From NCBI GenBank assembly GCA_002269645.1, contig NIVC01002406.1:1-64000 (forward strand): 64,000 nt of DNA. The letters are read 5' to 3'. Source of the stretch: Macrostomum lignano. Its lineage: Eukaryota. The position numbers and the translations under genes are program-made. Positions 12,701-33,599 of this stretch are shown one piece after another. Within the stretch, counting starts at the first letter, position 1, and each line of letters opens with the position of its first letter. The notes beneath the pieces were generated by a model. It did no database searches, was not told where the DNA came from, and saw only the letters and a list, made by a program, of their open reading frames with translations.

Positions 12701-13589
12701 GGGACATCTCGGTGCGGACAGAACCCTGAAGCGACTGCAGACCAAAGTCTGGTGGCCAAAGATGCGCAGCGACTGCGAAGTCTTCGTCAAGTGCTGTGTC
12801 GGTTGCCAAGCAGTGGCCACGCACGTGCACCAGACGCCTTTGAAGCCGACGGAGATGCCGGACGGACCTTGGCAACTGCTCGGCATGGACTTCTACGGCC
12901 CGGTGCAAGGTCAGATGCTGCTGGTCACCACGGACCTGTACTCCAAGTACCCGGAAGTCGACATCATGCAGTCAACGACGGCCGGCAACGTGACACCGCA
13001 TCTGAGACGGCTGTTCGGTCGGCACGGCATCCCTGCTGTCATCACGGACAACGGACCGCCCTTTAACTCTGCCGACTTTCACAGCTTCCTCAGCGGATAT
13101 GGAGTTCATCATCGGCTTATCTGTCCGCTGCATCCGGAGTCCAACGGAGCCACCGAGCGTGTCAACCGTAGCATCGGGAAGGTGGTGAAGACTGCTGTCG
13201 CTGAAGGTCGGAACTGGAGAGAGGCCCTGGACGACTGGCTTCTGGCGTTCCGCACAACGCCTCACCGAGCAACTGGGCGGACTCCGGCCGAGCTCCTCAT
13301 GGGCAGGCCGATCAACGACGGAATCCCAGCCAGCAGACAGCCGAAATCATCTGATGTCGGCCAGCAAGCCGTGAAGGACTGGAACTGGCGGTACACGCAG
13401 CAGATGAAGAGTGCGTTCGACAGGCGCACGGCCGCAAAGGAGCACCGCATCGTTCCCAGCATGAGTGTTCTTCGCAAGCAGCAGGCACGCAAAAAAACGC
13501 AGCTGCCATTCGAAACTCAGCCATGGACGGTGCAGGAGGTTCGAGGCGACACCTGCATCCTACGGCGAGGCCAGCAGTCTTGTATGTAG
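9786..13589 (+). CDS. Single-frame Gag-Pol (1267 aa) of Gypsy-1
   Basis: Two zinc knuckles (CYRCGERGHATC, CNNCGKPNHLAKAC), protease IDSGAS, RT (WVHDD), RNase H (VDAS..ERE..TDH), integrase zinc finger (HTGHLG..CVGC) and D-D-E core. Confidence 0.95.
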   Translation: MATNYIALPPPEPFVISDDPHNAGKRWREWAARFTDFIEASGVANENQKCKLLCYTAGKEVSDIVRELPKVEGEEKEHTLASIFDGLKRHFDDRKNIVFARYQFRLCVQQAGEKIEAWHSRLRAAVEPCEFENLRDSLIRDQLVATCTSDKLRRRLLQEADITLEDALRKARAFEAAEEQAAEMEKTTDAQVASLARSSKTATDRRGPASEPRSKPSQMNTCYRCGERGHATCDAARGKICNNCGKPNHLAKACRQSRSAGSRARQQIHTNADCTVPDAVASEDVFTLHRNGTYPAEVSLKFQVGSRQLSMMIDSGASCSIMSSRTFKTLNRPHLRTPESEVRVYGCSAPLNIFGIADLEVRVGAVSTVVPFHIMDGDGLTILGRDPAFRLGVLKIQRPEFNAMEAVNSNSDSARPSPQLQDILHRHKAVFEGIGCIKDVQVRVQLSDNAVPVCHAPSRVAAHLRAAVVDELKALERQDIIESVKGPSAWVARMVVVPKTDGGVRICQDLRDLNAFVVPEKQQIPTLDEVTEEMSGAKLFSELDIRKAFYQIPVHEDSRHLFTFSTPLGLMRLKRLSMGFTNASEILQRVMLGILSGIDGVRWVHDDVIVYAADAKQHHDRLDACLHRLREFGITLNKDKCKFAKPAVEFLGMHLSAKGIQPVAEKIRAVQDFRQPANVSEVRSFLGTANFLAKFIPRFADVSAPLRHLTKKGQPWEWTASHTEAFSTIKKAIAGADTLAFFDRKRQTELLVDASPIGLGAILTQKQPDGSSRPVAYASQALSPVEQRYAQIEREALAIKFACLKFEHYLAGDPNFTVVTDHRPLVPLFKPGSRPPQRIERMALRIQHLRFTLLYRPRPANRADLLSRQPLPELRPNIGEVIDAAFVSAVSAGAVPKGFSLQQIRDSSRTDTEIQAALSAIKTGSWNMLDPVQSALKSSSSELSESDGILLRGDLIVVPESLRRPILQLAHTGHLGADRTLKRLQTKVWWPKMRSDCEVFVKCCVGCQAVATHVHQTPLKPTEMPDGPWQLLGMDFYGPVQGQMLLVTTDLYSKYPEVDIMQSTTAGNVTPHLRRLFGRHGIPAVITDNGPPFNSADFHSFLSGYGVHHRLICPLHPESNGATERVNRSIGKVVKTAVAEGRNWREALDDWLLAFRTTPHRATGRTPAELLMGRPINDGIPASRQPKSSDVGQQAVKDWNWRYTQQMKSAFDRRTAAKEHRIVPSMSVLRKQQARKKTQLPFETQPWTVQEVRGDTCILRRGQQSCM

Positions 13590-13619
13590 CACGTGACCCA
13601 GCTGCGGCCTCTGATGGAA

Positions 13620-13875
13620 CCGTCGGGCCAGTCCGCCGGCCAGTCCATTGGCCAGTCAGCCGGCCAGTCCGCCGGCCAGTCAGCCGGCCAGTCCGCTGGC
13701 CAGTCAGCCGGCCAGTCCGCCAGCCAGTCAGCCGGCCAGTCAGCCGGCCAGTCCGCTGGCCAGTCCGCTGGCCAGTCAGCCGGCCAGTCCGCCAGCCAGT
13801 CCGCCGGCCAGTCAGCCGGCCAGTCCGCCGGCCAGTCCGCCGGCCAGTCAGCCGGTCAGTCCGCCAGCCAGGCCG
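13620..13875 (+). repeat. 12-bp tandem repeat (GGCCAGTC[A/C]GCC), about 21 copies, reading (AGQS)n in the pol frame
   Basis: Directly visible; lies in frame downstream of the pol TAG. Confidence 0.9.
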
Positions 13876-15594
13876 CTAGTCAAGAAGCAGAGTCTGTGGC
13901 TCAGAGACGGCATCCAAGAGCAGCCCGCGACACGCCGAAGTGCTATACGAGTTAAGTAACTGATCCGCATTGCCTGAAGCGGCATAACTCAAGCTGAAGC
14001 GGTGTACATGTACTTCGTAAACAGTTAATTTTCTTTAGTTCGAAGTTTTTTTTAATTCCTTTGGGGGGGGAGAAGTGTAGGCAGCGCCTACTATCGTGTG
14101 TGTTGGGGGGTTGTTAGCGGCTGCGCCGCGTGGCTCTGCTAGCTCAACCCTTATGCGTACAATATCAAATGTGCATGGTGCGACTTTAGCCACCATTCTG
14201 ACTCAGCTCTATAATCCAATAAATATACTGATCGCTATTATTCTCGCCTGCAAGCTTTCGGCAACTATCGACTACAACAAGCAGTCTAGCCTCGTTTCAC
14301 TCACTACACTGGAGACAAGCGTTACAAGCGTACGTTACACAAAGAGGATCAGTTCCGAGAAGAAGCAGAAGCTATCCAATTGCCTCATTGAGTGTCTTCA
14401 GCCGGAGAATCGCAGTGAAAGTGTTCAGATCTGTGATGGCACGACCATGGTTCCGACTGTCAGTGTCAATCCGGAATCTCCCATCGTATCAGGTGGTGCG
14501 ACGGCGATGGGTACTCCAACTGGCCAGCCTCGACAGTTGGTTGGGCCTTTTAATGCTAGCTTCAGGCATTGCTTTACCATAGCCGACATCGTTTCGGAAA
14601 AACCTAGTCATTAAGTCATCCGCTCTTCTTCGTTTGCTCCTTGATGCCATGACGTATAATTACGTTTCCGTTTCGTCCAATAAAATTTTAAATAAACAAG
14701 TTAAACTTGAATTATCAAGAATTTCTAATAAAAAAATAGGATTAACAATATTCGCACTCGGCCATCGCCCACAATGAGCGCTTAGCCAATCCAGCGAAAG
14801 GGCGGGCCACCCGCAAGCCGATCCCATTGGCTAATTTGCTGAGTGGTGCCACTGCCACCCCGATATTTGAAACTATGACTGTCCTCCTAACTTCCAGCTG
14901 CTCTCCTACCTGAATTTTCCTGTGCAATCCTCGTGCGATCTGTGTGCTCTGTCAATCCAAAAAATCCCAAAGAATGAAATATTTAGTTTTCTTTGCAAGT
15001 AATAGACAAGTGGTGAGATAATGAAAGAGGAGATTCTGCCTTCACATCTTAAAAATCTGAAAAAGCAGAAGTGGAGCCACTAAAGGAGCCACTGTAAATT
15101 AAAATGGAAATGTGAAGTGTTGTACAATGAAAAGTATTACGTAGCTCAGGTGTTCAGGTAAAAATTTAACAATATTTTATTTATTTTGAGATTTTCAGTG
15201 ATTTTTTTTTCAAAATGAAGTTGATGTCCAAGAAAATTCAAGAATTCAATAAATAACCTATAAATCATTAAAGGTTATCATGGAAGACAGTCTGGAGGCC
15301 AGCAGCTTCAGCTACACAAGGGAATTAATTAGAAGAAACGGCTAGCCAATGTACTAGAGAAAGTGCAGCCGCGCGTCTTCACCCGCGAAGATTGGAGAAG
15401 GGCCCGCAGCCGTTATCAAATAAGGGTAAGCTGTTAGTCCAAGTCAATTGGTGGGTCAGTATGTGAGTGAGTCAGTGGATGAGTGGTTCAGTGAGTAAGT
15501 TAGTCTTCCACATCCTCCTACTTAGAATGAGGCAACTGGATCAGCCTCAAACACGGATTTCTTTCAAAGCGATCCGAAGTCTGAGGTTTAATTT

Positions 15595-17126
15595 GTGTGC
15601 CACGACGAATTTGACGACTTCGAAAGGCTCTGCATTGCCGTCACATCACATCCATCGGTATTTGCTGCTGCTAGAAAGGAAAACGCAGAGACCCCAGCAG
15701 CGCTGGCGGTAGCGACAGAGACCCAAGCCTCTACAAGTGCAGCCTCTACAGCCGCAGCTGCGGAGGCTTTAGCGGCAGCGGCCGAAGCGGCAGCGGCGAA
15801 AGCGACAGCGACCGAAGCGGAAGCGGCATCGGCGGAAGCGGAAGCGGCAATGGCACTGCAGAGACGTCAACCGTTCAAAAAAACTCGATTGAGCACTAGT
15901 GCTGATGCTCGCACATCTGCTGCTGGGACAGACGATCGCCCAATCCGCTTGCAGTTCGGGCTGGGCAAAACCAAGAGGCTGCAGGAGCAGCTTCAGTCTA
16001 TTGCGCAAATGCCCTTAAATTCCGTTAACGGCCTCACATTCCTCCATGTGTATCACCTGCGAGAGCTGGTCCAGAGGACTCGAAGAAAGCCAGCAGCAGA
16101 AAATCAACATACTGGCTGGAATTCAGGCCCGTCTGGATCAGCAAGCAGGGCAATCAGCCAGCTTTGCTGTTTGAATCACTGAATTCACTGGCGGAGTATG
16201 CTCGCTTTCTTACTGAATTGCCTTCTGAGCGAGTTCTGCCTTTGGTAAGTTTCAGCGTTATTCCATTTTGATTTTAAAATTCACCTACTTGCTTATGAGG
16301 AAAAGTAGTGTAGTTCCTATATTAATCAAAATTAAGCTGGAACCCAATTTACTGTCACTTCCGTCCGTTCAATGATTAATCACCCCCGTCTTTACCAGCG
16401 CGGAGATTGGGCAACTGCAAGTCACCAACATGGTCAGTGTCATCCTGACGCCTCGAATGCAAGCATTGGTCAATTTCAAAGCGTGCGGAACAGGGTGTGC
16501 CCAGTCTGGTTTAGCCACAGAGCTATCGGATCGGGAGCTTGCGTTTCAATCCAAGTTTTTGGGCTTTTGGGCTAATCCAAGGTATGATATTCTGTGATTA
16601 ACCTAAATGCAACTAACCCTTCCCACAATCTGAAATCCATAAAACAATAGTAACGCTTATTTTACATCAATATAGTCTTTTTATACCACACTCCTGTATA
16701 GTTATCAACCTATTTGCATGCCTTGTTGGAATTGCAGATGCCGTCCCAGCAATTTATGGCACCAGAGCAGAGGACGGCAGACCGTCTCAGGATCTGGTCG
16801 CTAGCCAAGTGCGGCAGTATTTGAGGCACGGAGCTGACCGGATCTCGGGGCGGTCGCATCGCCGCAACACAATCGGTGCCATGACGCCTTCAAATTCAAT
16901 TCGCGCAAGCGCAGCCGCGACTCCACAAGCCAGCGGGCTTTCGCAGGCCACCACATCTGCTACGCCGCAGTGGGCCCAAAAGCGGCCAGTTCCCACTCAG
17001 CAGCAGAAGGCAGCAAAGCGCCGCAGAGTGAGCAGGGCTGTTCGAGAGACTGATGATTTGATGGGGTCAAGTGACGATGAATTTGGGTTTCCTACCGACT
17101 ACAGTGACGGAAATGTCAAATCCTAG
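15595..17126 (+). pseudogene. Spliced, probably degenerate transposon-associated gene with Ala-rich linker and DUF4806/BEN-like C-terminus
   Basis: Ala-rich ORF 15595-16182; donor-like GTAAGT near 16245; segment NMVSVILTPRMQALVNFK (about 16430-16480); acceptor ttgcag| at 16737 then DAVPAIYG..VASQVRQYLRHGADRISGRSHRR, resembling the DUF4806 'WLR.A.DR.GGR' end. One junction needs a frameshift. Confidence 0.4.
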
Positions 17127-17350
17127 GCTTGTAGCAGTCATTTTACTAATTTGTACTTTATTTATAAATTCCTAAGACCTTTATTTTATCAATAACGCAT
17201 CTCTGCCCATAGACAAAAAACCAATGCTGTACCGATGCAAACTAATGTAAAAGCCCCCTGCGCATCAAGTGACAAAATACACACGCGTTTCCACTGTAAT
17301 AAATTCTACTTGTAGCAGCAGCTACAAACTGGTAGCAGAGCGTGGTTCCC

Positions 17351-18189
17351 AAATGTCAAGCACCGAAACTCCTTCTGCTTTGGCCAGCGCGTCTGGTAAC
17401 GCACCGGCGGTGGACGAGCAGAACCAACCTTTGCCTCCACCCCAGCCGAGTGAACTCAGCCGGGTCGCTGTTCGACCTCCAGCTTTCTACCGGAAATCAC
17501 CGGAGACCTGGTTCAAGCAACTCGAATCGCAATTCGCGCTTGCAAACATCACCAACGGCGTCACAAAATACCACTACGCTCTGGCAGCTCTCCCGGAAGA
17601 CATCGCCTGCGAGCTCAACTTTGACAGCAATAATTATGACAACTTGAAGACTGCGGTATCCGACAGCCTGCGAGCCAACCGTCATCAGCTGATCGAGGAG
17701 GCCCTGTCGGCGGTGGAGCTCGGCCAGAGGAGACCAAGCCAACTCGTTACCGAGATAAAACGGCGGTTTACAGAAGTCGGCCTGAAGGTCGACGATGCCA
17801 TTGTGAAGTCACGCTTGATTTCAGCGCTGCCAGCTAACATCCGCTCAGCCCTCGTCGGACACGAAAGTAGCCCGCTGGACACCTTCGCAAAGATAGCAGA
17901 CAGTATGCTCGCTGTCGCTGGTCGTCCTTCTCCTTTTTCCGACATCAACCGGCTCGCTGCAGCTGAAAGGACAGAGCAGCCGGCGCCCCAGAGTCCGCGC
18001 CGGCCGGCTGCCCCTGGCCGTCGACAGCAGCGACCACTCATCTGCAATGCGCACATCTACTACGCTAACAAGGCTCGGACCTGCCGACCTTGGTGCAAAT
18101 GGCCAGGCTCGAAGCCGGCAAACCTGCTCCGCCAAGGCCAGTCGACGCCAGCCCAGTCTCGTTCTTCATCGCCATCCCCAAACGAATAA
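17351..18189 (+). CDS. Gag of Gypsy-2
   Basis: ATG at 17351 just after the PBS; [38 protein letters not shown]-terminus; C-x2-H-x9-C-x3-C motif ([18 protein letters not shown]). Confidence 0.88.
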
Positions 18190-18230
18190 GTCATGTGCAG
18201 CGGCCGAGCCATGACAACGATCAGGCCCGT
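18177..18230 (+). promoter_or_regulatory. Candidate -1 ribosomal frameshift signal (CCCAAAC plus downstream stem-loop/pseudoknot)
   Basis: C CCA AAC in the gag frame at 18177-18183; 6-nt spacer; stem GTCATG (18190-18195)/CATGAC (18210-18215); the -1 frame is the pol ORF. Confidence 0.7.
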
Positions 18231-21200
18231 ACGCCGTTAGTCTCTGTCCAAGTTCTGGGTTCCAACGTTCAGTTCATTGTCGACACCGGCGCCGAGAAAT
18301 CGCTCCTTCCTCCCTGTTTCGTTCCGTTCAACCTCACTACTCCATGCAACGTTCAACTTCGTGGTGTCAGCGGTCACAATGTACGGTCCTATGGCCAATG
18401 CGCCACTTCAATTATGGTAAAAGGCCTCCGCCGCACCTTTCATGCCAACTTTATAATCGCAGAGACAGCACCAATTCTCGGATCCGATTTCCTAGCATCC
18501 TATGGCCTATCCGTCGACATGGGAGCCAAGTGCCTTCGAGACCCGCTTACCTCGTTGACTGCACTGCTTCGATTTGACACCAAAAGCAACTTCCAACCAC
18601 CGTCAATCCAGGTGGTTTCTAACGACAAAGGCAACGACTACTTCAGCCACTTTCCTGGCCTCACAGATGCTCCAGATTACTCGGTTCTGCCCACCACTCC
18701 GGTGAAACATCGCATCATCACATCCGGGGACCCGGTTTTCTGCAAGCCTCGCCCGCTCTCACCGGCAAAGTATACCGCAGCCAAGGCGGAATTCGACAAG
18801 CTTCTTCAGATGGGAATCGTTCTTCCGTCATGCAGTCCTTGGGCTTCACCTCTCCACATGGTGAAGAAGCCTGACGGATCTTGGAGACCATGCGGAGACT
18901 ACCGCGCCCTGAACAGCGCCACGGTACCCGACAGGTATCCACTGCCTCACATTCGGAATTTTCACCACCAACTCCATGGCAGCCAAATTTTCAGCAAACT
19001 AGACTTGGTCAAGGCATTCCACTTCATACCAGTCGCTGAAGAGGACGTCGCCAAGACAGCAATCTGCACACCGTTTGGCTCCTTCGAGTGCATCAGGATG
19101 CCTTTCGGGTTGCGAAACTCCGGCAGCACATTCCAGCGTTTCATTGACTCGCTATTTCGTGACATGACTAGTGTCATCACGTACATTGACGACATCCTCA
19201 TCCACAGCAAATCGGAGAGCGATCATCACAGAGACGTCCAGATTGTGATGCAACGACTTCACAACGAGGGACTTCGAGTGCAGCCAACCAAGTGCCAGTT
19301 TTTCCAGAGCAGCATCGAGTTCCTCGGTCATCTGGTCTCGGCGTCCGGGATCCAGCCACTTCCATCTCGTGTGGAGACGCTGCGTCAAATCTCACCTCCA
19401 AAAGATTTCAAGAGTCTACAGCGCGTACTCGGCATGTTTGGCTTCTACCAACGCCACATCCCCAACTACGCTAGCATCGTATTGCCTCTGCGATCGCTAA
19501 CCGACGCCGATTACAAATGGCAACCGGAGCACGAAACCACGCTCTGCTACCAGTTTGTAGCTGCTGCTACAAGTAAAATTTATTAACAGTGGAAACGCGT
19601 GTGTATTTTGTCACTTGATGCGCAGGCGTATTGCCTCTGCGATCGCTAACCGACGCCGATTACAAATGGCAACCGGAGCACGATTCCGCGCTCAAAGAGC
19701 TTCAAGACGGCTTAGCCGCAGCGGTGACTCTAGCATTCCCGACCACGACAGGAAACTTCACGATCACGTCGGATGCAAGCTCCTTCGCCATCGGCGCCAG
19801 CCTCCACCAGGTAGAAAACGGCGACTCAGTCCCCATCGCTTTCTATTCTCGGAAGCTCACTCAAACAAAGTCATCGTACAGCGCATTCGACCGCGAGCTT
19901 CTCGCCGTGTTTGCCGCAGTCAAAACCTGGCGCTACCTAATCCATGGACATCCAACGACTGTATTCTGCGATCACAAGCCGTTGATTGGCGCTTTCCACA
20001 GCAACAAAGAGCGTCTCTCCGATCGGCAGCAACGCCAGTTGGCTTACTATCTCAGAATACGTCACTGACGTCATCTACATCCCTGGCGCCAAGAACGTCG
20101 TCGCCGACACTCTCTCTCGAGACGTTACTCGACCAGACGAATGCACAGTCAACGTTGTCCAAGCCGAAAAGCTAGATCTACCCGCCGACCTGCCGGCGAT
20201 CGCCAAGGCACAACGTGAAGCAAAACTTGCTGACAATGACCGCTACCGTCCGTTCGACATCGGTTTGCTGGACTGCCCACTGTACTGCGAAACCTCGCAG
20301 CCGAATCCGCGACCGGTCGTTCCGGAATGTCTACGTCGACAGATCGTCCAATCATTGCACAGCATATCTCACCCAGGTATCAAAGCTACTCTACGTTTAG
20401 TTGCCTATCGTTTTTTCTGGCCCTGCATGAAGTCAGATGTACAACGGTGGACGTCTGAATGCACACAATGCCAAGCAGCCAAGGTTGGTCGTCACGTACA
20501 CCGCCCGTTACACCATTTGCCTTCACCGACACAACGTTTCACAACTGTTCACATTGATCTGGTCGGACCACTCCCGCTGCCCGACACCGTCGAAGCAGCC
20601 TCTCAACCGCGATACCTTCTGACCATGGTGGACTCGTACTCCCGTTGGGTCGAGGCGATTCCGTTGAACTCCATCACAAGTATGGCTGTAGCACAAGCCT
20701 TCGTCAGCCACTGGATCTGCCGTTTCGGTCCGCCACTCACATTGATCACCGACCAAGGAGCACAGTTTCGATCGGAGCTGATGGCAAATCTGGTGAACCT
20801 TCTTGGAGTCCATCACATACGCACATCTGCTTACAATCCCAAGGCCAATGGCATGATCGAGAGAGTCCATCGCACGCTGACAGCCGGTCTGAGAGCTCGT
20901 GGACATTGCTGGTTGACTCAACTTCCTATCGTCCTGTACGGCCTGCGGATCAATCCGGACGACAAAGGAAACTCACCATTCTCGATCGTGACAGGAGAGC
21001 AGCCACTGGTTCCACCTGTCACCACCGAAGATACCGACCACCACCAGCTGTCAACTCGATTACACGATCTTTTCTTTCCATACCGCCTTCCGCGAACGCG
21101 ACAGCAGCCGGTCCACCTGCCATCCGACCTGGCGTCCTGCAACTTTGCCTGGCTGCGCGTCGACAGGGTACGACACCCACTTGAAGCGCCGTACCAAGGA

Positions 21201-21452
21201 CCGTACAAAGTGCTGCGCCGTTCCGACAACACGATGACACTCGAAATCAAAGGCAAACAGCAATCTGTATCAATTGAGCGAGTAAAACCAGCCAGACTGC
21301 CAGACAGTCAACGACAGACCCGTTCAATGACAGCCGCCCAACCGCAGGATTCTCGTCCAGGTGTTCCCATTCCGAGGGAACCGACCAGCTCGCCCACGCC
21401 TACTCGACACGTTCACTTTTCGGACTCACCTGAAGTTAATGTTTTTAACTAA
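18184..21452 (+). pseudogene. Pol of Gypsy-2 (PR-RT-RNaseH-IN with GPY/F), broken by an insertion at 19535-19626 and a +1 frameshift near 20050
   Basis: [41 protein letters not shown], integrase HIDLVGPL..TDQGAQF..GMIERVHR, LEAPYQGPYKV. Confidence 0.93.
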
Positions 21453-21874
21453 ATTATACTATAATCCACTTCACTAACTAACACTAGCACTAATTACTAA
21501 TACGAGCGTAATATTTTGACGTTTCGCTTGCCTAGACACCTGCACTCTTTCTCCGTGAGGGGGAAGTATTTGTAGCAGTCATTTTACTAATTTGTACTTT
21601 ATTTATAAATTCCTAAGACCTTTATTTTATCAATAACGCATCTCTGCCCATAGACATAAAACCAATGCTGTACCGATGCAAACTAATGTTAAAGCCCCCT
21701 GCGCATCAAGTGACAAAATACACACGCGTTTCCACTGTTAATAAATTTTACTTGTAGCAGCAGCTACAGGCTAATTTATATGCCCAAATGAGAGTATAGT
21801 CGATATCTTAACAAATTTACAAGTGAATCTAGATATCAGTATAGGCTAAACGAGTTTAAGATGGGCAAAATTAC

Positions 21875-22375
21875 ATCACTAGTGGTGTAGCTCGAGCTGC
21901 CCAACTTCCTGTATGTTACAGAATCGCCACCGACGGAAGCCACGCGTTTGCAGATCAGCTCAGCATTTTTGGTGGGATTCACTGCGATTACAATGTCGCC
22001 TCTGTGGATGGAAAATTCAACACAAAATAAGAAATACCTTTGCACACAAATCGACATTTTGTGTGGCACTCAATTTCAACGTAGTGCCATGTTTTGCCTT
22101 TTTAACTTAGCCGAAGGTTAAGCTATAGGCTGTTTTTAAATCGGTAAGGTGTCTTACCTTGCAATCTGTTTAATAGAGACAGGCGCCACTCGTGTATAGA
22201 CAATGGATTTATCGGGTATTGTTGGCTCCATGCTGACTCCATCTATCGTATATGACGGGTACATTGGCCAAATATGCAGATAAGTGAAAGTGGTAGCAAC
22301 GGCAGTCGCTAAGCAGGTCCAGCCGGTATGTTGACTGAAAAACCTGTAACAACTACTGGCGCTCTTTAAGTGTGC
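21875..22375 (-). CDS. IMMP1L: IMP1 exons 22375-22158 and 22001-21875 (catalytic Ser and Lys); joined to 7293-7129 across a 14.6-kb intron
   Basis: GVSMEPT (Ser) and RGDIVIAVNPTKNAELICKRVASVGGD (Lys) motifs; GT-AG introns 22157-22002 and 21874-7294 with matching phases. The 5' boundary is less certain (alternative acceptor at 22344) and no genomic ATG was found. Confidence 0.88.
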
Positions 22376-22473
22376 CTGCAAAATAGTTTTGCTCTCGAAT
22401 ATATTATATCGAAGGAGAAGCGATACTATCTGTATGCTTAATCGTTCGAAGCAATATCTCGAAAAATTGACTA

Positions 22474-24011
22474 TCTCTACCTATAAAAATCAAAACTCTG
22501 TGTGTCTGTGGCCAATTTTGTTCGCTATGGACTCCCAAACCAAATTACACCAAATTTTGCACCCACCCTAAACTCACTACGGAGAATGTCTTAGGCTACC
22601 TTAAAAGTTCCTTAATTTGAGTCTTCCTACCTACAAGTGCAAAAAATTGCTCAAAATTCGCGATTTTTTTACTTAATCCTCCATAGCGCCGCTCCAGTTT
22701 TACTAATCCACTTCAAATTTAACACAATCAATTTTCAAATATTTAACACGATCGTATAAAATTTGGAGTCTCAAAGTCAATCCTAAACGGCGCTGTGCAC
22801 TTTTAAAGTTAGGCTGTTTTTTTTGTCAGCGTAGCAACCACCCTAACCGCCTGCCTCTCTTTCCCAATAAGGGCCCAGAGAGGGTTAATGGGTTTAAAAA
22901 TAGACTACATGCTCCATAGGCCCACAGTTAGTTGGAGGCTGAAACCGAAAGTGGGAGTTTGGGTCAGACAAACTAGCTTGGGGGCAAAAGAAGGTACTTC
23001 TATTGAATCCAGGGAGATGTGCAAAGTGGGGTTTAAAAATTGACTAATTTTGGCTGCCATAAGTTTGCTTTACCCAAAGCGATTGACTTCAAACTTGACA
23101 CAATTCTTCATTGACTCATTTTCTGTAAATTGAAGTGGTGTAAGGGGAGATGAGAAATGAGAGATGAGAGATAGAGGATAGAGGAGAGTGGAGAGAGAAA
23201 AGAGGAGACAAGAGGGAGAGAGTATAGAAGAGGGAAGAGAAGAGAAGAGAAGAAAGGAGAAAGGAAAGTGAGGAGTCAATAGAGGGGAAAGAAACAGTAC
23301 AGAGAAGGGAGATGAAAGAACATAAAACAGTAAAGATGACCGATGAAAGAGAGGGGATGAGAGAGCAGAGACGAGAGTGAACAGACGAGAGAAGAGAAAG
23401 TAGAGAGAAGAGAACAGAGGAGAGATAAGAGAGAAGAGTTTACAGAGACGAGAGGAAAGATGAGAGACAAAGGGAGAGGGGGGAAGAGAGATAGGAGAGG
23501 AGAGATAAGAGAGAGAGGATCAGAGAGAAATTAGAAAAGAAAAGAGAGGAGAGGAGAGAGAAAAGAAGAGAGAGAAGAGATGAGATAAGAGAGATGAAAG
23601 AGAAGAAAGATGAGGGAAGGTACGAGAGAAGAGGGAAGAGAGGAGAGAGGAGAGAGAAAAAGGAGAAAAGAGACGAGGGACAAGAGAAAAGAGGAAACAG
23701 AAGGGAAGATAGAAGTTTCAAACGATCCAAGGGACGTAGGGAGAGTCAGAGGCAGAGGCCAGAGTTTGCCAATACATGTCAGACAGACATTGCCCGACAT
23801 TCTGCGCAGCACCCTGCAGCCGCCAACAATATCAACTGTTTGCCTCAAATCCTAATTTTACACGATTGTACTCCATTTTATGTTTACCTCTATCCTACTA
23901 ACTATTAACAAGTTTTTGCCTGAGTATGGCCTTGGATTTCAGAATACATGCAAAAATAGTTCCACGGATTAGAATTTCCCGGGTTCAAAATCTGCGGGTT
24001 TCAACAGCTTT
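22474..24011 (+). mobile_element. Non-autonomous Helitron-like element, AG-rich family, copy 1
   Basis: A|TCTCTACCTATAAAAATC 5' end, conserved about 600-bp block, purine-rich low-complexity core (about 23130-23700), 3' block ending CCCGGGTTCAAAATCTGCGGGTTTCAACAGCTT; homologous to the copies at 52091-60854. Confidence 0.75.
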
Positions 24012-24052
24012 TCGTAATATAAATAAGCTTTGTTTGACTTTTGCAGTCTATA

Positions 24053-25099
24053 CAGGGAAGCCTCTATGGTCGCTGCGCTCTCCAGGAAGGGACACTCACC
24101 CACCCCACCCCACTCCGCTATACGAGTTTAGGGGCATGGTATAGAATGAATGAAATGATGCTACTGCTTATCGATTTCTCGCTAGAGCAGTTTGTACGCG
24201 AACTTTTGTAACACCTCTCGTATTTCATAGCTTGCTAACTGGAAAAAGAATATATACACAGCCGGAGCTTCCCCGAAAGTGGACAGCAGCAGAGTTGGAG
24301 AAGTTGTTGCGCAGCGATCCAAAGCACAACCGGATCTGCTCGCTGCATTTTTCGGAAAGGTTATTTGTAACAAACTCTCAGGACTCCAACTCCAGCTGTA
24401 AGCGCTCCGCATTTGCAAATGCAGATCGACAAGAAGCAAAGAAGCTGAAAAATGGACGGTTGAATTCTGATGCCGTACCCAGCATCTTTCCAAACGCGCC
24501 ATTCTACTTCAGCAAGTGTTCCGAGGAGCGACCTGCCACAATGATATCTGCTTAGACTCGGCGAGAGAGTGCCATGCGTCGCTGCGAGGATAAGGCAGAA
24601 ACATTTTGAAGTCAAAACTATCTGAGAAATGAGCTATAGCTCTGATGTATACCCGTAGTAGACTTAGCTTTTGTTATAGAGTCATACTCGTACAAAGTGC
24701 TATTTTCATACAGCATACCCCAGCACTTTTCTGCTCTGTAGGTAAGTTAATTTCACTCTCTTTTGCTAAAGTATCACCTAAGAGTAATCATTTCATTTTT
24801 GTTGCATGGCCCGAAGGGTTGTAAAGTATTTTTCTCGCACTAACAAAACGAAAGTTTTTTGAATAATACAAATTAACCTTGGAGACCTAATATAAAGTTC
24901 TGAATGTTTTGCGTTGAATAGTGCAAACCGTATATTTCTATGACTTTTAGTTAAAAAGTTATCAGTCATAGAAATGAAAAAACATTGCATTTTTCTATTC
25001 ATTCACTGCTTTCAAATTGGGATTTTACCCTTAAACTTGTATGCTGCCTAAACTAGTGTGCCTTTCTGGGGAACTAAGCGACCATAGGAGGCTTCCCTG
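24053..25099 (+). mobile_element. Non-autonomous P-superfamily element with THAP-domain remnant
   Basis: TIRs CAGGGAAGCCTC(C)TATGGTCGC at both ends, perfect 7-bp TSD GTCTATA (24046-24052, 25100-25106); internal RICSLHF...RLNSDAVPSIFPNAPFYFS (THAP C-terminal half and AVPTIF box). Confidence 0.88.
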
Positions 25100-25235
25100 G
25101 TCTATATGACCCATAGACTTAGGCAAAACGCAGCCAAGACCCCTTGCAGGCGGCGCATGGAGGATTCTCAGTTTGGATGGCTTATTCTCAGTTAGGCTGA
25201 CAAGCTATTTAGCTTTTGTCAGCCAAGTTAAGAAT

Positions 25236-25399
25236 CAGTGGCGGATCTAGAGTTTCATTTTGGGGGGGGGCGGTCCAAGTTTGGAGCGCCAATTTTTAGC
25301 TTAGGGCGCAAAAATGCGTGTAGGGGGAGAAAAGTCAAGCTTAGGGGCGCTAAAAAGTTTTTTTTGGGGGGGGGGCGCCCCCCCCCAAATCCGCCCCTG
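25236..25399. mobile_element. 164-bp hAT-type MITE
   Basis: Ends CAGTGGCGGATCT...AAATCCGCCCCTG; 8-bp flanks TTAAGAAT/TTGAGAAT (7 of 8 identical). Confidence 0.75.
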
Positions 25400-26377
25400 T
25401 TGAGAATTAAGCCAACCAAGTTGAGAATTCCCATTGGCAACAGTACATTTGGTCTTGCCCATAGACATGCCAGTGGACACAGCGCTGCCCTTGCCCAACG
25501 GTAACGGAATATATTTTGTGGTCAGACGTAGCAAACTGCAGCAATCAGGCGCTGGCGATCTGCGAGCGATGTTGCTGCAGGCATTCTGCGTTTATTCTGC
25601 ACGGCTGCGACTGATTCTCAATTTGGCTGGCTTAATTTTTATCAACTTAGTTGGCTTTATCTGTGGATAAGGACTGTTGGCAAATGGGAATTCTCAACTT
25701 GGTTGACAAAAAAAGCAATACTAAAATGTATATGCGAATTTTGGCGAGTGAGAGGCTATTAGTATCGGCGGTTACCCTCAGTTTTGGGGATGGGGGATGG
25801 TTGTCAGTCTCCTGATTGGTGGTGATTCTCACTTCAAACTTGATTCTCCTCCCCCTCACCCTAGTGTTATGCCTACCGATTATATCGTCTTCAGCTGTCA
25901 GGTTACCGAGCATTTTCATATCACTTTAAATGAACAGCAAACATGATGCATTCTCCCGGGACTTTTATCTAGTTGTTTAACTATGAAAAGCTAGGCAAAC
26001 AGACTAGATTTAGCTAATTTAAAAATAAGCTCAATGCTTTAAACCCCTACTATAGGTTACATTCAAACAACGTAATGCCATAAAGATTCGAATAGCCAAT
26101 GATTTATAACCCACTAAACTAAGTATAAGCGAAAAGAAAAGATGAAAAAATGTTTATACTGAAAATTAATTTAAGCTTAATGATGAAGTTTATTTTGCAT
26201 AAAGGTACGTAAATGCGTAGGTAAGTATACCTACGCAACAATCTTAATTTATTTTCGTTCAGGTGACATTATAAGAAAGAATGCTGTGCACACCTAACTT
26301 AATTATTACACATAATTGAACTTGAAGTTAAAGGTAATGCATTGCTCGGTAATACATATATACAAAATAATTTTTTT

Positions 26378-26852
26378 TCAGATTGGTTTGTCGAGGGCAT
26401 CAATAATTAACTTTGCCAGCTGAAAGCGTGACCTTTTCGGCTGGGCAGAAGCGCATTCGTTTAAGTAGTCCCCAACCTGCTGGGAATCAGCGATCTGGTC
26501 ATTTAATAGGCTGAGTCGCAGCATGCTACATGCATGCAGTAGGTTCCAGTCGGACAGCCGATGATCGCAGACCTCATCGACTTTGGCTTTGCTCCCATTG
26601 GTAGTGTGATGCTGCCTGCTGACGTAACTGTTCAGCTGCAGTGTGTCGACAACTATTACATTAGAAAGATCAACCAACGTCACGGTTCGAGTGTCAGGGT
26701 AGACAGCAAAATTAGCAAGATCCCAGTCGTTGAGGTAAAGTGAAAAGCCTGTGTCACTCGCCGTGAGCTTTATGGCCAGCTGTAAAATGCGCATCGATAA
26801 AAGCAGACGCTCCGATAATGGGGCAGTCAGATAATCTGTGGCTGACCTGCCT
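26378..26852 (-). CDS. DIPK2A: Divergent protein kinase domain 2A (C3orf58/DIA1), exon 3
   Basis: Acceptor cttcag| at 26853, phase 2; FSLYLNDWDLANFAVYPDTRTVTLVDLSNVIVVD kinase-like catalytic region; TGA at 26380-26378. Confidence 0.9.
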
Positions 26853-27135
26853 CTGAAGAGTTTTAAGATGTAAGCAAACGCTTAAATTATCGAAAGTTTA
26901 GTCATAAGTATATGATACAAGACAAAAATTACAATACTAAAAAGTGTAGTGTTCTACTTCCCACAAAAAGCATAAAAAATGTTAATATACTACTTACACA
27001 TTTAATTCAGTAGGATAAGTATGGGGAATAAAAATAAGTACTGAATCACATGCGTAATTTTGTGAACCAATCATAAGAAGGCACAAGTCATAAAAAGCTA
27101 TTTTTGCAACCAACCAATAATGTGTGACCTACAGT

Positions 27136-27936
27136 TGTCAGTTCGAAACCCCATCAGCGATTTATCATTCGGCCTGCACCGAATGAACCAATTAAAAGTA
27201 ACCCAGGTGCGGTAACCAATCATTCGCTTTTACAGTAGACTAGTTGCTTAACTTTCTACCCTGTCATGCTTGGCAGCAACCAAAGCGTGAACCTTTGACA
27301 AGAAATATCCCGACGACCTCACGTGGGGTCCGATTCTCTATAAATACAAGTGGTCCGAGCGGACCGGAGCCTCAGAATCTTCCAGAGAGAAGGAGCTCCG
27401 AAGAGGAAGCCAGACTTCCTTCAGACCAAGTCAACCAGGACTCGGCTGAGTTATTTGCGGTAAGCCTTACTCATTTGCGCTGGTAGTTGAGTCGACTTAA
27501 ATTGATATTGTGACCGAGTCTGTTTGAGACTCCATTGGTTGTAGTCTCCAGAAGGACTACCCTGATAGCCCATAGAAGACTATCAGTGATTACCGCAGCT
27601 ATACCTAGAGTGGATTTAGCCACTGCTAGAAGGAAAAGGCTTATTTAAAACCGCAGCGCAGCGCAGGGATCCCCGTTGTTAATTTGAAGCTCCTATTGGT
27701 CCGAACTACAGATACCGGCCGAAAACGACTTCGTTGGAAGTAAAAAAGACCAGAACAACTAAATCAAGACGTCTAAACTGATTAAGATCGAGAACTACGC
27801 ACCGGAACAGCTCTACTGATCAGGACTTAAGGTAATAGATACCTTCATTTTATTACTGAGTTGCCTAGCAGTAAGCTAGAAGTGATTGTTTCTTAATTAC
27901 TAAGAAAGATGTGTTGCTTACTAATTAAGGAACACA
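27136..27936 (+). mobile_element. Possible solo-LTR-like fragment in DIPK2A intron 2
   Basis: GC-richer island starting TGTCAG with TATAAATA near 27338 and donor-like GTAAG motifs; no TSD or second LTR found. Confidence 0.3.
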
Positions 27937-29641
27937 TCAAAAGTTCAATTCAGAATGATGATATTGTAGATTAGAGTTGGAAATGTGGACGCTATAAACC
28001 GCAAGACCGATGGATTTTGTATAAATATTATTTACGATAATCACAACGCGCTATTAGACTGACGATATGGCCCAAATACATTATATTAAATAGCTCATAC
28101 AGGCAATATCTGCTCCGATTTTGTTTCTTTGGCCTTGAGAAAACCTATGCCATCGACGATGATTCAGAATTATTATCCTATTAATCCAGTAGCTTGGCCT
28201 GCATGGCTCACGATCTATTTATCTGGCTTTATTTAGCTCATCTATTTAGAACGCTAATTTAGCGGGGTCAAATAAATAAAAATCAAAGCATGCATGCAGA
28301 GTGTCCAAGTGAGCGATAAATTTAATTAACGGGCTCAAGGCTGGTCCAAGCTGGGGTTTAAAAACTCGATATCAATATATCAATAGTTCTTCCTTTGCTT
28401 CTTCTTAAGCAGTTTATTGGCGTAAAACGATATTTTAGACGACAATACAGAATATAGTGAATGATTTTTCAAGTGTGATACGAGTACGAAAAATGATGTT
28501 TCCTTGTAAGAAAACTTTCTGAAAAAGCGTACCGTACAATCACCCAACTATGACGCTCTGCGTCCTAGAAAGTAGATTGGGTTGGACAGGTGCATGCTGC
28601 ATCGTCCTTACTATATTTATCTGTGTAGCTCCTGGACGTTTTTTGATTCTGAATTGAAAACCCGGAGTCAAATCGTTTGGTCTAATGGCTACCCAATAAG
28701 CTTGGTTGACTGGATCATCAATTCGCTTAATTGAAAAAGTTGCTCGGAATTCTGTTCTGATACAGCATCCAAGAGACCAGTAATTCTGATAAAACGATTA
28801 TTCTGCCATTTATTGGTGTTGCGTCCATTCAGTTCAAGAAGTTTGAACTGCTTAAGGGCTTTTCTAAGAGCTTTTGACAAAAGCGGTTTATTTTTCGAAA
28901 ATAAAGATGTTTGTTCCCCGTGCTTAAATGTGTCTCGTTTAAAAGTTTTGCTGCTTTGGTAATCAGAGTGTCTCCTATGTCGGGAAAACCAAAAGAAACA
29001 TGCATCCCAGGGCTGGAGAACACTGGATAAAAAACTTTGCGATAAATGACCACTTAATTTGATTCAAAGATTGTGATTGTTAGCTCATTGACCTGTTTTG
29101 AACTATTTATCGTTGCAACTCTGACTTTAAACTTATATATTAGAGGCATTTTGCATACTAAGAAGCTTAGTCCAAGCCTATTGTAGTGACTGGCTGCAAA
29201 CTAGTTATTTAGCAGCATTCACTAGCTTATCCTAAGGACTCTGTGTTCCGCTGCACAGCAGCCCAGTCCGCCTGATCTAAGGAGAGATACCCTGTGCTGG
29301 ACCTGTGTTTACTGTCTGATGAATCATCGCCAGAGCAGGCGTGTGGGTAGCCACACACAATATTTTCCCAACCCGCGCTGAAGAGGCAAAGCAGGATGAC
29401 TCACCCGATGCTCTCCCGCGCGCGGAGTGTAAACTGTAAAGGCTGCCTAGAGGGAGTAAACAGGATGACACATCAGCCCAAATCTATTTTTAGCACATAA
29501 ACTAGCAATCTTCGCCCCCCGTTGGGGGACATCTGGATAGAATCTCTGTTCTCTACAAGTAACAAAAAGACAGCCAAATAAAGCCTTCAAAAAGACAACA
29601 GACAAACTGCTCAAATAAAGTGCAATGCAAAAAGAAATCAT

Positions 29642-29830
29642 CCCAAGACAGCAAGCATCCCCCAGATAGCAAGCATCCCCCAGATTGCAAGCATCCCCCA
29701 GATAGCAAGCATCCCCCAGATAGCAAGCATCCCCCAGATAGCAAGCATCCCCCAAATAGCAAGCATCCCCCAGATAGGAAGCATCCCCCCTCCCAGATAG
29801 CAAGCATCCCCAAATAGTAAGCATCCACCA
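29642..29830. repeat. 18-bp minisatellite (CAGATAGCAAGCATCCCC), about 10 copies
   Basis: Directly visible. Confidence 0.95.
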
Positions 29831-29924
29831 GACAATAAGTAGCTAGTGCAACAATTTCCTTAGCTCTATAGTGGCTCCTTTAAAATTGGCATGACGATTA
29901 CTTTTACGTTTGAAATTGTGTATC

Positions 29925-31645
29925 TTTTATGTTTGACATGGTGGCTCTTTAATGTTTGACATGGTGGCTCTTTAATGTTTGACATGGTGGCTCTTTTATG
30001 TTTGACATGGTGGCTCTTTAGTGTTTGACATAGTGACTCTTTAATGTTCGACATGGTTTCTCTTTAATGTTTTGACTTTGTGGCTCTTTAATGTTTGACA
30101 TGGTGGCTCTTTTATGTTGGACATGGTGGCTCTTTTATGTTGACATCGTGGCTCTTTTATGTTCTAAATGGTAGCTCTTTTATGTTTGATTCGGTGTTTT
30201 TTTAATGTCTGACATGGTGTCTCTTTAATGTTTGACATGGTGGCTCTTTAATGTTCGACATGGTGGCTCTTTAATGTTCAAAATGGTGGCTCTTTTATGT
30301 TTGACTTGGTGGTTCTTTTATGTTTAACATGGTGGCTCCTTTTTGTTCGACATGGTGGCTCTTTAATGTTTGACATGGTGGCTCTTTAATTTTCGACATG
30401 GTGGCTCTTTCATGTTCGACATGGTGGCTGTTTTATGTTTGAAATGGTGGCTCTTTAATATTTGACAAGGTGGCTCTTTAATGTTGGACATGATGGCTTT
30501 TTAATGTTCGACATAGTGGCTCTTTAATATTCTACATGGTGGCTTTTTTAATGTTCGACATGTTCGCTTTTTAATGTTCTTCAGGGTGGCTGTTTTATGT
30601 TCGAAATGGTGGCTCTTTAATATTTGACAAGGTGGCTCTTTAATGTTTGACATGGTGGCTTTTTAATGTTAGACATGGTGGCTCTTTAATATTTGACAAG
30701 GTGGCTCTTTAATGTTTGACATGGTGGCTCTTTAATGTTAGACATGGTGGCTCTTTAATGTTAGAGATGATGGCTCTTTAATGTTCGACATGGAGTCACA
30801 TATATGTTCTACATGGTGGCTCTTTTATGTTTGATTCGGGGTTTTTTAATGTCTGACATGATGTCTCTTTAATGTTTGACATGGTGGCTCTTTTATGTTT
30901 GACATTGTGGCTCCTTAATGTTTGACATGGTGGCTCTTTTATGTTCTACATGGTCGCTCTTATATGTTTGAGTCGGGGTTTTTTAATGTCTGACATGATG
31001 TCTCTTTAATGTTTGACATGGTGGCTCTTTAATGTTTGACATGGTGGCTCTTTAATGTTTGACTTGGTGGCTCTTTTATGTTTGACATGGTGGCTCTTTT
31101 ATGTTTGACATGGTGGCTCTTTAGTGTTTGACATAGTGACTCTTTAATGTTTGACATGGTGGCTCTTTAGTGTTTGACATAGTGACTCTTTAATGTTTGA
31201 CATGGTGGCTCTTTTATGTTTGACATGGTGGCTCTTTAGTGTTTGACATAGTGACTCTTTAATGTTCGATATGGTGGCTCTTTGATGTTCGACATGGTGG
31301 CTCTTTAATGTTTGACATATTGTGGCTCTTTAATTTTTGACATGATGGCTCTTTTATGTTCGACATGGTCGTTCTTTTGTGTTTGACATGGTGGCTCTTT
31401 TATGCTTGACATGGTGGCTCTTTACTGTTTGACATGGTGGCTCTTTAGTGTTTGACATAGTGACTCTTTAATGTTCGACATGGTGGCTCTATAATCTTTG
31501 ACATTGTGCTTTTTTGTGGTTAGCATTTCGTGTTTTTAAGGTGTTTTAATAAAAAAAATAATGTTAGACATGATGGCTCTTTAATGTTCGACATGGAGTC
31601 ACATATATGTTCGACATGGTGGCTCTTTAATGTTTGACATTGTGT
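29925..31645. repeat. 23-bp minisatellite (TTTGACATGGTGGCTCTTTAATG), roughly 75 diverged copies
   Basis: Directly visible; copy number estimated from length. Confidence 0.95.
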
Positions 31646-32389
31646 TTTTTTTGTGTTTAGAATTTCGCGTTTTTAAGGTGTTTTAATAAAAAAATCTTTT
31701 TGCACTACTAAGATTCGAACCCAGGTCGCCCAGTCCAGTCTGTTCGCATCTATGCTATCTCTTGTCAATTGGAGAACATGAATTGTGGCCCTTATAATTA
31801 AATTCTTATAGCAAATCGGTTAGAGTAAAAAGTTATGACACAATCAATTTCTCAGTCAGCCAGTATCAGTGTCAATTTAAGTTAGAAATTTTGTTACGCC
31901 ATTTCAATCAAGTTGTGTGTGCATTTCTTCGGCACTGTTTTCAACTGGTTGTGATGTAATCTTTATCAGAATTGAAATTCAGTCAGTCAATGTTTTCTCT
32001 AGCATTCTTACAATGCATTTCAAGTCGAAAATTTTGCTTGACCTTTGCAAAAAAGCATGTTTTTCGAATATTTAATCCCTTTAACATTGAGCAATTTCTT
32101 AGCCAAGATGCATGTACCGTCCCAGGAAAATTTCTGATCGAATGGTGCAAGTGTTGCAAGAAGTTAGTTCATGGAAAACAATAAAAAAGCACATTTTCTT
32201 AAACACCAATTCCTTCTTCACTTTTAAAAATCACCTTATTCGTGTAAAATTGTCACGGACAAAGATGTTTGCAAAGTGAAAGAATTACTTTTTCTCTAAA
32301 ATTAACAAACAGACAACAAAATATAGCTTCCCATAAATAGAAAATATTCCCAAGACAGCAACCACCCCCCTCCAAAAGTAAACAAACGC

Positions 32390-33400: not shown

Positions 33401-33599
33401 CAGCAAGTAGCTAGTGCAAATGTTACCTCCGCTAAAGCAATAATCGCTTTCTCAGGTTGTGCAAAAATCCACATCTCAGCGAGCGCAATAGTCTCTTTTT
33501 TAGACAGCGCAATAATCAGCTTCTCAGCTAGTGCAATAATCCTTTACTCATCAAGTCCAAAAATCGATGTCTGGGATAGTGCAATAGCCATTTCTAATC

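What the first reader, a model, noticed from the sequence alone, without database searches (positions are those of the whole stretch)
22330..22400. IMP1 appears to lack a genomic start codon; a flatworm spliced leader would supply it in frame
Seen: the first IMP1 coding exon begins after a strong acceptor (aaaactattttgcag|GCA CAC TTA at 22375) in phase 0, with no in-frame ATG before the catalytic region except the internal PMY Met, and no convincing upstream coding exon in the TE-filled 4 kb up to DIPK2A. Established: flatworm spliced leaders end in AUG, which can act as the initiator. Inference: SL-AUG + 218 + 127 + 165 nt gives MAHLKSASSCYRFF... of 170 aa, close to the about 166 aa of vertebrate IMMP1L. 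Translation of this mitochondrial protease would then depend on trans-splicing.
Basis: partly seen in the sequence, partly recalled or inferred. Interest (0 to 1): 0.72.

Follow-up and report, generated by a model that had tools for sequence, protein, structure and literature searches.

The report
Flatworm protease gene borrowing its start codon
A copy of the mitochondrial protease gene IMMP1L in the flatworm Macrostomum lignano has no start codon of its own and most likely gets its AUG from the spliced leader added by trans-splicing, a mechanism already known in flatworms, so this is a tidy but unsurprising example.

Summary
The window is Macrostomum lignano assembly Mlig_3_7, scaffold NIVC01002406.1. 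On the minus strand lies a three-exon IMMP1L-type gene (218 + 127 + 165 nt), annotated Mlig017705.g8. Its first exon starts right after the acceptor ttttgcAG at 22377-22376. No in-frame ATG precedes the hydrophobic segment, and the in-frame read-through upstream meets a stop without an ATG.

- The M. lignano spliced leader ends in ...TTGCATG.
- The acceptor fits the published trans-splice motif [T/C]TNCAG.
- SL-AUG plus exon 1 is in frame. It gives a 170-aa protein with the catalytic Ser at residue 49; in homologs the median position is 40.5.
- The RNA-seq-based annotation calls both paralogs 5'-partial, with no upstream exon.
- The paralog (L001) reads ttgcATG|GCA at exactly this junction. 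This is either an imprint of SL-bearing RNA-seq reads, since the assembly was polished with RNA-seq, or a real genomic ATG. Both readings place the Met directly before Ala-His-Leu-Lys.

I could not reach any SL-containing read or cDNA. SL-AUG initiation has been known since Cheng et al. 2006 and has been noted for Macrostomum, so this is a new member of a known kind.

The parts
22376..22390 (-). 3' end of the outron with the proposed trans-splice acceptor, aaaactattttgcAG (AG at 22377-22376)
   Evidence: Read. TTGCAG fits the M. lignano trans-splice acceptor motif [T/C]TNCAG (PMC8629364). The paralog L001 has ...atttgcATG at the same place.
22158..22375 (-). IMMP1L exon 1 (218 nt, phase 0). 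It encodes AHLKSASSCYRFF..., the hydrophobic segment (residues 21-37 of the SL-Met model) and the catalytic SMEPT box. It has no in-frame ATG before Met39.
   Evidence: Pfam Peptidase_S26.
22262..22264 (-). Internal Met39 codon, the only genomic in-frame ATG before the catalytic Ser. It lies after the hydrophobic segment.
   Evidence: Starting here would leave 10 residues before the catalytic Ser; in homologs the Ser sits at a median position of 40.5.
22232..22234 (-). Codon of the catalytic Ser (Ser49 in the SL-Met model), in GVSMEPT
   Evidence: Alignment to signal peptidase I structures and to the S26 profile.
21875..22001 (-). IMMP1L exon 2 (127 nt), RGDIVIAVNPTKNAELICKRV..., containing the general-base Lys (K92)
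   Evidence: (tblastn).
7129..7293 (-). Coding part of IMMP1L exon 3 (165 nt including the TAA stop), with the GDNANESLDSRSYG box
7052..7057 (-). AATAAA polyadenylation signal, about 70 nt after the stop
   Evidence: Read.
7294..21874 (-). Intron 2 (14.6 kb). It carries two LTR-retrotransposon pol ORF sets on the opposite strand (9786-13589 and 17269-21452).
22376..26377 (-). Repeat-rich spacer or outron between the stop of the upstream same-strand PIP49_C/DIPK2A gene and the IMMP1L acceptor
   Evidence: AATAAA signals of the upstream gene lie at 26253 and 26194.

Best explanation
This is one of at least two copies of the Macrostomum lignano ortholog of mitochondrial inner membrane protease subunit 1 (IMMP1L/Imp1; annotated Mlig017705.g8). 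Its pre-mRNA is transcribed from somewhere in the repeat-rich 4 kb upstream, or possibly together with the upstream DIPK2A-like gene. The outron is removed by spliced-leader trans-splicing at the acceptor ttttgcAG|GCA (window 22377-22376 | 22375). The 35-nt leader CGGTCTCTTACTGCGAAGACTCAATTTATTGCATG is joined directly to GCA, so its last three bases become the initiator codon in the context GCAUGG. Translation then gives MAHLKSASSCYRFF..., a 170-aa protein. It has a basic N-terminus free of acidic residues, a hydrophobic segment, the Ser49/Lys92 dyad and the GDN..S.DSR box.

Shown: the gene structure, the absence of a genomic start, the leader sequence (from the literature), the frame, the normal N-terminal length, and the ATG at the junction in the paralog.

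Inferred: that the leader is actually spliced at this site and that ribosomes start on its AUG.
For: (1) Organism and leader. The window is 100% identical to Mlig_3_7 scaffold NIVC01002406.1. The M. lignano SL ends in TTGCATG and is found on about 30% of genes (PMC8629364).

(2) The acceptor TTGCAG fits [T/C]TNCAG, the top motif at M. lignano trans-splice sites.

(3) No genomic in-frame ATG. A stop lies 36 codons upstream with no ATG in between, and the only exon-1 ATG before the catalytic Ser is Met39.

(4) The SL-AUG model puts the catalytic Ser at residue 49. In 66 full-length homologs the median is 40.5 and the 10-90% range is 34-51.5. The Pfam S26 match starts at residue 24, profile position 7. 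So no N-terminal coding sequence is missing. The first 45 residues hold 2 K/R, 3 H and no D/E, which suits a mitochondrial N-terminus.

(5) The RNA-seq-guided GenBank annotation marks both paralogs 'partial' at the 5' end. Both start 9 nt inside exon 1 and have no upstream exon.

(6) Paralog L001 reads gcaaaactatTTGCATG|GCACAC where the window reads gcaaaactattTTGCAG|GCACAC. Positions -2 to -5 all carry the leader's bases. This is the only run of 3 or more mismatches in unique, well-aligned sequence across 7.7 kb. Mlig_3_7 was polished with Pilon using RNA-seq (PMC5730564), so this may be an imprint of SL-exon junction reads. If it is instead a real allele, it still places Met directly before AHLK.

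(7) Precedent. In S. mansoni more than 40 cDNAs need the SL AUG (Cheng 2006, as cited in PMC9851317). [quoted passage not shown]
Against: I saw no SL-containing read, EST or cDNA for this gene. The SL-Met protein is not in the 15-billion-protein collection. No metagenome contig carries the junction. No supplementary table that I could read lists the gene.

The annotated CDS begins at Lys5, not at the acceptor, and I can explain this only by conjecture: poor end-to-end read mapping at SL junctions.

The junction ATG in the paralog needs only a T insertion into CAG, plus a one-base change in a T run, to arise naturally. It is therefore not proof of an RNA imprint.

Flatworm acceptors are often shared between cis- and trans-splicing (PMC12582326), so a non-coding or short coding upstream exon cannot be excluded from sequence alone.

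The Schistosoma bovis ortholog has its own genomic ATG, so dependence on the leader is not a conserved feature of flatworm IMP1.
Confidence: 0.75

Rival explanations
1. An upstream cis-spliced exon that the annotation and I both missed carries the ATG. The acceptor at 22376 would then be an ordinary intron acceptor.
For: Flatworm acceptors are often shared between cis- and trans-splicing (PMC12582326). One ATG...GTGAG phase-0 mini-exon exists at 25919/25913-25860 and is retained in L001.
Against: The RNA-seq-guided annotation of both paralogs has no upstream exon and calls the CDS 5'-partial. The N-terminus is already of full length without one. The only candidate is acidic (MKMLGNLTAEDDIIGRHNTR), would move the catalytic Ser to about residue 69 (90th percentile in homologs: 51.5), and lies only a few hundred nt after the upstream gene's poly(A) signals.
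Confidence: 0.1
2. This copy is a silent or decaying duplicate without a start codon. The working gene is the paralog on NIVC01000385.1 (L001), which has a real genomic ATG.
For: L001 reads ATG|GCA at the junction. M. lignano DV1 carries large duplications (PMC8629364). All three CDS differences between the copies are non-synonymous.
Against: The window copy has an intact ORF, intact splice sites, catalytic residues and a poly(A) signal. Its CDS is 99.4% identical to the paralog's, against about 95% in aligned non-coding sequence. Its acceptor is a good trans-splice site. The L001 ATG may itself be an RNA-seq polishing artefact.
Confidence: 0.08
3. Translation starts inside the gene, either at Met39 or at a near-cognate codon in an unspliced leader (ATT TTG just before the acceptor). 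This would give a protein without the SL-derived Met.
For: Met39 is a genomic in-frame ATG. Trans-splicing at the alternative acceptor at 22344 would put the SL AUG out of frame and would require downstream initiation.
Against: A Met39 start removes the hydrophobic segment (residues 21-37) and leaves 10 residues before the catalytic Ser. That is far below the family range, and the Pfam domain match begins at residue 24. Near-cognate starts are inefficient, and nothing here points to one.
Confidence: 0.05

Closest known systems
SL-AUG-initiated mRNAs of Schistosoma mansoni (Cheng, Cohen, Ndegwa, Davis 2006, J Biol Chem 281:733; also called slORFs, PMC9851317)
   Same: The flatworm leader ends in AUG. 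The acceptor lies directly before an ORF that has no genomic start, and the leader's AUG is in frame and needed for a full-length conserved protein.
   Different: A different species (a free-living macrostomorph) and a different gene. Here trans-splicing and initiation are inferred from DNA, annotation and a paralog, not shown by cDNA or reporter assays.
Mitochondrial inner membrane protease subunit 1 (IMMP1L / yeast Imp1; Peptidase S26)
   Same: S26 domain, the SMEPT Ser box, the KR Lys box, the GDN..S.DSR box, about 170 aa, and a basic N-terminus with a hydrophobic segment. The best named homologs are IMMP1L of Tubulanus, Gouania and Aplysia.
   Different: Only 35-45% identical to any homolog outside M. 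lignano. The hydrophobic segment is Thr/Ala-rich and only moderately hydrophobic. The Schistosoma bovis ortholog has a genomic ATG.
SL sequence found in M. lignano genome assemblies at the 5' end of a trans-spliced protein gene (Mlig013257.g1, mistaken earlier for the SL RNA gene; PMC8629364)
   Same: Leader sequence sitting in assembled genomic DNA directly before the first exon of a trans-spliced gene, as seen for 7 nt in paralog L001.
   Different: Here only the last 7 nt match the leader, and only 4 of them differ from the other copy. A natural mutation remains possible.

Membership tests
SL-AUG-initiated flatworm mRNA (slORF) | The organism has a spliced leader whose 3' end is AUG | tested here: met
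   The window is M. lignano Mlig_3_7. SL = CGGTCTCTTACTGCGAAGACTCAATTTATTGCATG (PMC8629364).
SL-AUG-initiated flatworm mRNA (slORF) | A splice acceptor lies directly 5' of the ORF, so that SL-AUG is in frame | tested here: met
   ttttgcAG|GCA CAC TTA in phase 0; fits [T/C]TNCAG.
SL-AUG-initiated flatworm mRNA (slORF) | No usable genomic in-frame AUG upstream of the conserved protein core | tested here: met
   An in-frame stop with no ATG lies upstream. The only earlier ATG, Met39, lies after the hydrophobic segment.
SL-AUG-initiated flatworm mRNA (slORF) | SL-containing cDNA or reads joined at this acceptor | not testable with these tools
   No RNA data could be reached. Indirect evidence only: the 5'-partial annotation and leader-like ttgcATG at the junction in paralog L001.
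SL-AUG-initiated flatworm mRNA (slORF) | Translation actually starts at the SL AUG | not testable with these tools
   Needs ribosome profiling, N-terminal proteomics or a reporter assay.
Peptidase S26 / IMMP1L (Imp1) | S26 domain above the curated threshold | tested here: met
   PF10502, 71.5 bits against a cut-off of 22.9; TIGR02227, 70.9 bits against 47.
Peptidase S26 / IMMP1L (Imp1) | Ser-Lys catalytic dyad and the GDN..S.DSR box | tested here: met
   Ser49 in GVSMEPT, Lys92 in CKRV, and GDNANESLDSRSYG, aligned to solved signal peptidase I structures.
Peptidase S26 / IMMP1L (Imp1) | Closer to subunit 1 than to subunit 2 | tested here: inconclusive
   The top named homologs are 'mitochondrial inner membrane protease subunit 1'. 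SMEPT and DSR are Imp1-like from my own knowledge of the family. I built no tree that includes IMMP2L.
Peptidase S26 / IMMP1L (Imp1) | N-terminal membrane anchor and mitochondrial location | tested here: inconclusive
   The hydrophobic segment at residues 21-37 has a mean Kyte-Doolittle value of only 1.06. The N-terminus is basic with no acidic residues. Location was not testable.

The most novel reading that the evidence does not exclude
The ATG at the junction in the paralog (L001, NIVC01000385.1) is real genomic sequence. A one-base insertion turned the trans-splice acceptor CAG|G into CATG|G, which destroyed the acceptor and hard-wired the start codon that the leader used to donate. The two homeologs of a recent polyploid would then be a caught-in-the-act example of a leader-donated and a genome-encoded initiator replacing each other at the same nucleotide. 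The acceptor consensus (TTNCAG) is one insertion away from the leader's end (TTGCATG), so this could be a general route for gaining or losing dependence on trans-splicing.
Probability: 0.25. Interest if true: 0.55.

Novelty: new member of a known kind. Interest (0 to 1): 0.3.

Why it matters
If correct, making this copy of a conserved mitochondrial protease depends entirely on trans-splicing. Gene finders that demand a genomic ATG will then truncate it or label it 'partial', as GenBank does for both copies.

It adds a free-living, early-branching flatworm and a housekeeping mitochondrial gene to a phenomenon documented mainly in schistosomes.

The paralog comparison also raises a practical warning. 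Polishing a genome with RNA-seq in a trans-splicing organism may write leader bases into acceptor sites. That would create false genomic ATGs and erase real acceptors, and it may also homogenise the exons of paralogs.

Tried and rejected
- SL RNA gene or leader sequence in the window: none. There was no Rfam hit and no match of 10 nt or more to the leader's 3' end. Shorter TTGCATG matches in the window precede no long ORF.
- Direct RNA evidence: the SL-Met proteins of both copies are not in the protein collection. The junction sequence is not in JGI metagenome contigs. The gene ids and 'IMMP1L' are absent from the papers and supplements I could read.
- Closer Macrostomum orthologs: none in either protein library. 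The best non-self hit is 37% identical.
- Upstream coding exon: I scanned 3.8 kb for ATG...GTRAG in phase 0. The only candidate was rejected as acidic, too long and too close to the upstream gene's 3' end.
- Read-through of the acceptor: rejected, because it meets a stop without an ATG.
- Alternative acceptor at 22344: the leader AUG would be out of frame.
- A retrocopy origin for the paralog's leader-like bases: rejected, because L001 keeps both introns.
- Operon with the DIPK2A-like gene: undecided. The spacer is 4.0 kb, of which I could show at least 1.46 kb to be repeats. That does not bring it under the published limit of 1 kb after subtracting repeats.

Full report
**What is there**

The feature lies on the minus strand.
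- Exon 1 is 22375..22158 (218 nt).
- Exon 2 is 22001..21875 (127 nt).
- Exon 3 coding part is 7293..7129 (165 nt including TAA).
- Donors are GTAAGA and GTAATT; acceptors are ccacAG and ttttAG. AATAAA lies at 7057-7052.
- Intron 2 is 14.6 kb and holds two LTR-retrotransposon pol regions on the other strand.

The first exon is preceded by aaaactattttgcAG and opens in phase 0 with GCA CAC TTA AAG. In frame, the sequence upstream of the acceptor runs 35 codons without an ATG and then meets a stop. Within exon 1, the only ATG before the catalytic SMEPT box is Met39, which lies after the hydrophobic segment.

**Which organism and gene**

A protein search returned one cluster: two Macrostomum lignano entries, both 'hypothetical protein, partial' (PAA84195.1 = Mlig014258g2 and PAA58138.1 = Mlig017705g8). 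Window 1..32366 is 100% identical to the start of scaffold NIVC01002406.1 of assembly GCA_002269645.1, Mlig_3_7. The window gene is therefore Mlig017705.g8.

The protein is a Peptidase S26 member (PF10502, 71.5 bits; TIGR02227, 70.9 bits). It has Ser49, Lys92 and the GDNANESLDSRSYG box, aligned to solved signal peptidases. In an exhaustive HMMER search, the best named relatives are 'mitochondrial inner membrane protease subunit 1' of a nemertean, a fish and a sea hare. Outside M. lignano nothing is more than about 45% identical.

**Does the organism have the right leader?**

Yes. M. lignano has a single 35-nt spliced leader, CGGTCTCTTACTGCGAAGACTCAATTTATTGCATG, on about 30% of its genes. The top motif at its trans-splice acceptors is [T/C]TNCAG (PMC8629364). 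The acceptor here, TTGCAG, fits that motif.

Joining the leader to 22375 gives ...UUGCAUG|GCACAC. The AUG is in frame and in a good context, with G at -3 and G at +4. An acceptor at 22344 would be out of frame. The weak AAG at 22364 would be in frame but does not fit the motif.

**Is anything missing from the N-terminus?**

No. The Pfam match begins at residue 24, which is profile position 7. Among 66 homologs that start with Met and are 140-200 aa long, the catalytic Ser sits at a median position of 40.5 (10-90% range 34-51.5). The SL-Met model puts it at 49. A Met39 start would put it at 11. The first 45 residues are basic and free of acidic residues, as expected for a mitochondrial inner-membrane protein.

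**Evidence from the annotation**

The Mlig_3_7 annotation was built from RNA-seq, a de novo transcriptome and mapped SL-trimmed reads (PMC5730564). For both paralogs it gives a 5'-partial CDS with no upstream exon, starting at Lys5, 9 nt inside exon 1. A cis-spliced upstream exon used by most transcripts should have been picked up.

I cannot explain the 9-nt shortfall with certainty. A likely cause is that reads containing leader bases map poorly end to end, so coverage starts a few bases late. That is conjecture.

**The paralog**

On NIVC01000385.1 (L001) the homologous junction reads gcaaaactatTTGCATG|GCACAC, against gcaaaactattTTGCAG|GCACAC in the window. L001 equals the leader at positions -1 to -7 and equals the window from -6 upstream. 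Four consecutive positions (-2 to -5) carry the leader's bases.

In a 7.7-kb alignment of the two copies (357 mismatches), this is the only run of 3 or more mismatches outside misaligned ends and simple repeats.

Mlig_3_7 was polished with Pilon using Illumina DNA and RNA-seq mapped by STAR (PMC5730564). Earlier work mistook leader sequence at the 5' end of a protein gene in the assembly for the SL RNA gene (PMC8629364). The two CDSs differ at 3 of 510 positions, none synonymous, while aligned non-coding sequence differs at about 4.6%. This fits RNA-driven homogenisation, although constraint or gene conversion would also explain it.

I therefore favour, at roughly 60:35, the view that the L001 ATG is an imprint of reads spanning the leader-exon junction. 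That would be indirect RNA evidence for trans-splicing at exactly this site.

The alternative is a real mutation. A T inserted into CAG gives CATG, because the acceptor already resembles the leader's end. In that case one homeolog would have hard-wired the start codon. Either reading places the initiator Met directly before Ala-His-Leu-Lys. L001 keeps both introns, so it is not a retrocopy.

**Rivals**

- An upstream coding exon. The only ATG...GTRAG phase-0 candidate in 3.8 kb (25919/25913-25860) is acidic and would make the N-terminus abnormally long. It also sits just past the upstream gene's poly(A) signals. It cannot be excluded outright, because flatworm acceptors are often shared between cis- and trans-splicing (PMC12582326).
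- A dead copy. The ORF, splice sites and catalytic residues are all intact.
- Internal or near-cognate initiation. This would remove the membrane segment.

**Comparison with a related species**

The Schistosoma bovis ortholog (L003) has its own genomic ATG and no acceptor in front of it. Reliance on the leader is therefore not an ancestral property of flatworm IMP1.

**What could not be done**

I could not reach any SL-containing read or cDNA. Trans-splicing at this acceptor and initiation at the leader AUG therefore remain inferences.

**Novelty**

Use of the leader's AUG as initiator was shown in S. mansoni in 2006. There it is in frame in 28% of trans-spliced mRNAs and required by more than 40 cDNAs (Cheng et al., as summarised in PMC9851317). 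All flatworm leaders end in AUG (PMC12582326). [quoted passage not shown]

This gene is a clean new example, not a new mechanism. The more interesting by-products are two: the possible RNA-polishing imprint in Mlig_3_7, and the less likely case of a start codon hard-wired in one homeolog.

Noticed in passing
L001 9984-9991 (NIVC01000385.1), homologous to window 22376-22383: The paralog reads ttgcATG where the window has tttgcAG. Four consecutive bases are changed to those of the spliced leader, in an assembly that was polished with RNA-seq. This is either a polishing imprint or a real genomic start codon.
   Followed up: partly
window CDS exons compared with L001 9992-10209, 10361-10487, 22614-22778: The two paralog CDSs differ at 3 of 510 nt, all non-synonymous, with no synonymous change. 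Aligned non-coding sequence differs at about 4.6% plus many indels. Possible causes are homogenisation by RNA-seq polishing, gene conversion or constraint.
   Followed up: partly
window 22366-22375 / L001 and L002 9992-10000: In both paralogs the GenBank CDS starts at Lys5, 9 nt inside exon 1, not at the acceptor. No AG precedes that point. This is probably an annotation or coverage effect.
   Followed up: no
window 4-5553 (also L001 about 23894-30034): A 150-bp satellite of 37 perfectly identical copies (100% matches) sits at the very start of the scaffold, downstream of the IMMP1L 3' end. The paralogous locus has the same array.
   Followed up: no
window 9786-13589 (+) and 17269-21452 (+): Two LTR-retrotransposon coding regions lie inside IMMP1L intron 2 on the opposite strand. 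The first is one 1267-aa ORF with zinc knuckle, RT, RNase H and integrase domains. The second is split over several ORFs (DUF7041, protease, RT, integrase).
   Followed up: partly
window 26378-32366 and beyond (-): The upstream same-strand gene has a PIP49_C (FAM69/DIPK) kinase domain. It is annotated as 437 aa here but only 200 aa at the paralogous locus. It might form an operon with IMMP1L if most of the 4-kb spacer is repeats.
   Followed up: partly
window 29642-35141: A cluster of minisatellites with periods of 18, 23, 24/48/72 and 59/194 nt, tens of copies each, lies in and upstream of the DIPK2A-like gene.
   Followed up: no
window 23140-23700, 57606-58814, 60071-60553: Long purine-rich (GA)n-like simple repeats. 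They account for the strong GC and AT skew in these stretches.
   Followed up: no
window 45904-48605 (-): Two long exons of an amino-acid permease gene (AA_permease and AA_permease_C domains).
   Followed up: no
L003 3001 (Schistosoma bovis OX103955.1): The schistosome IMP1 ortholog starts with a genomic ATG (cacttATGCCGAGA), with no acceptor in front of it. The Macrostomum gene has none.
   Followed up: yes
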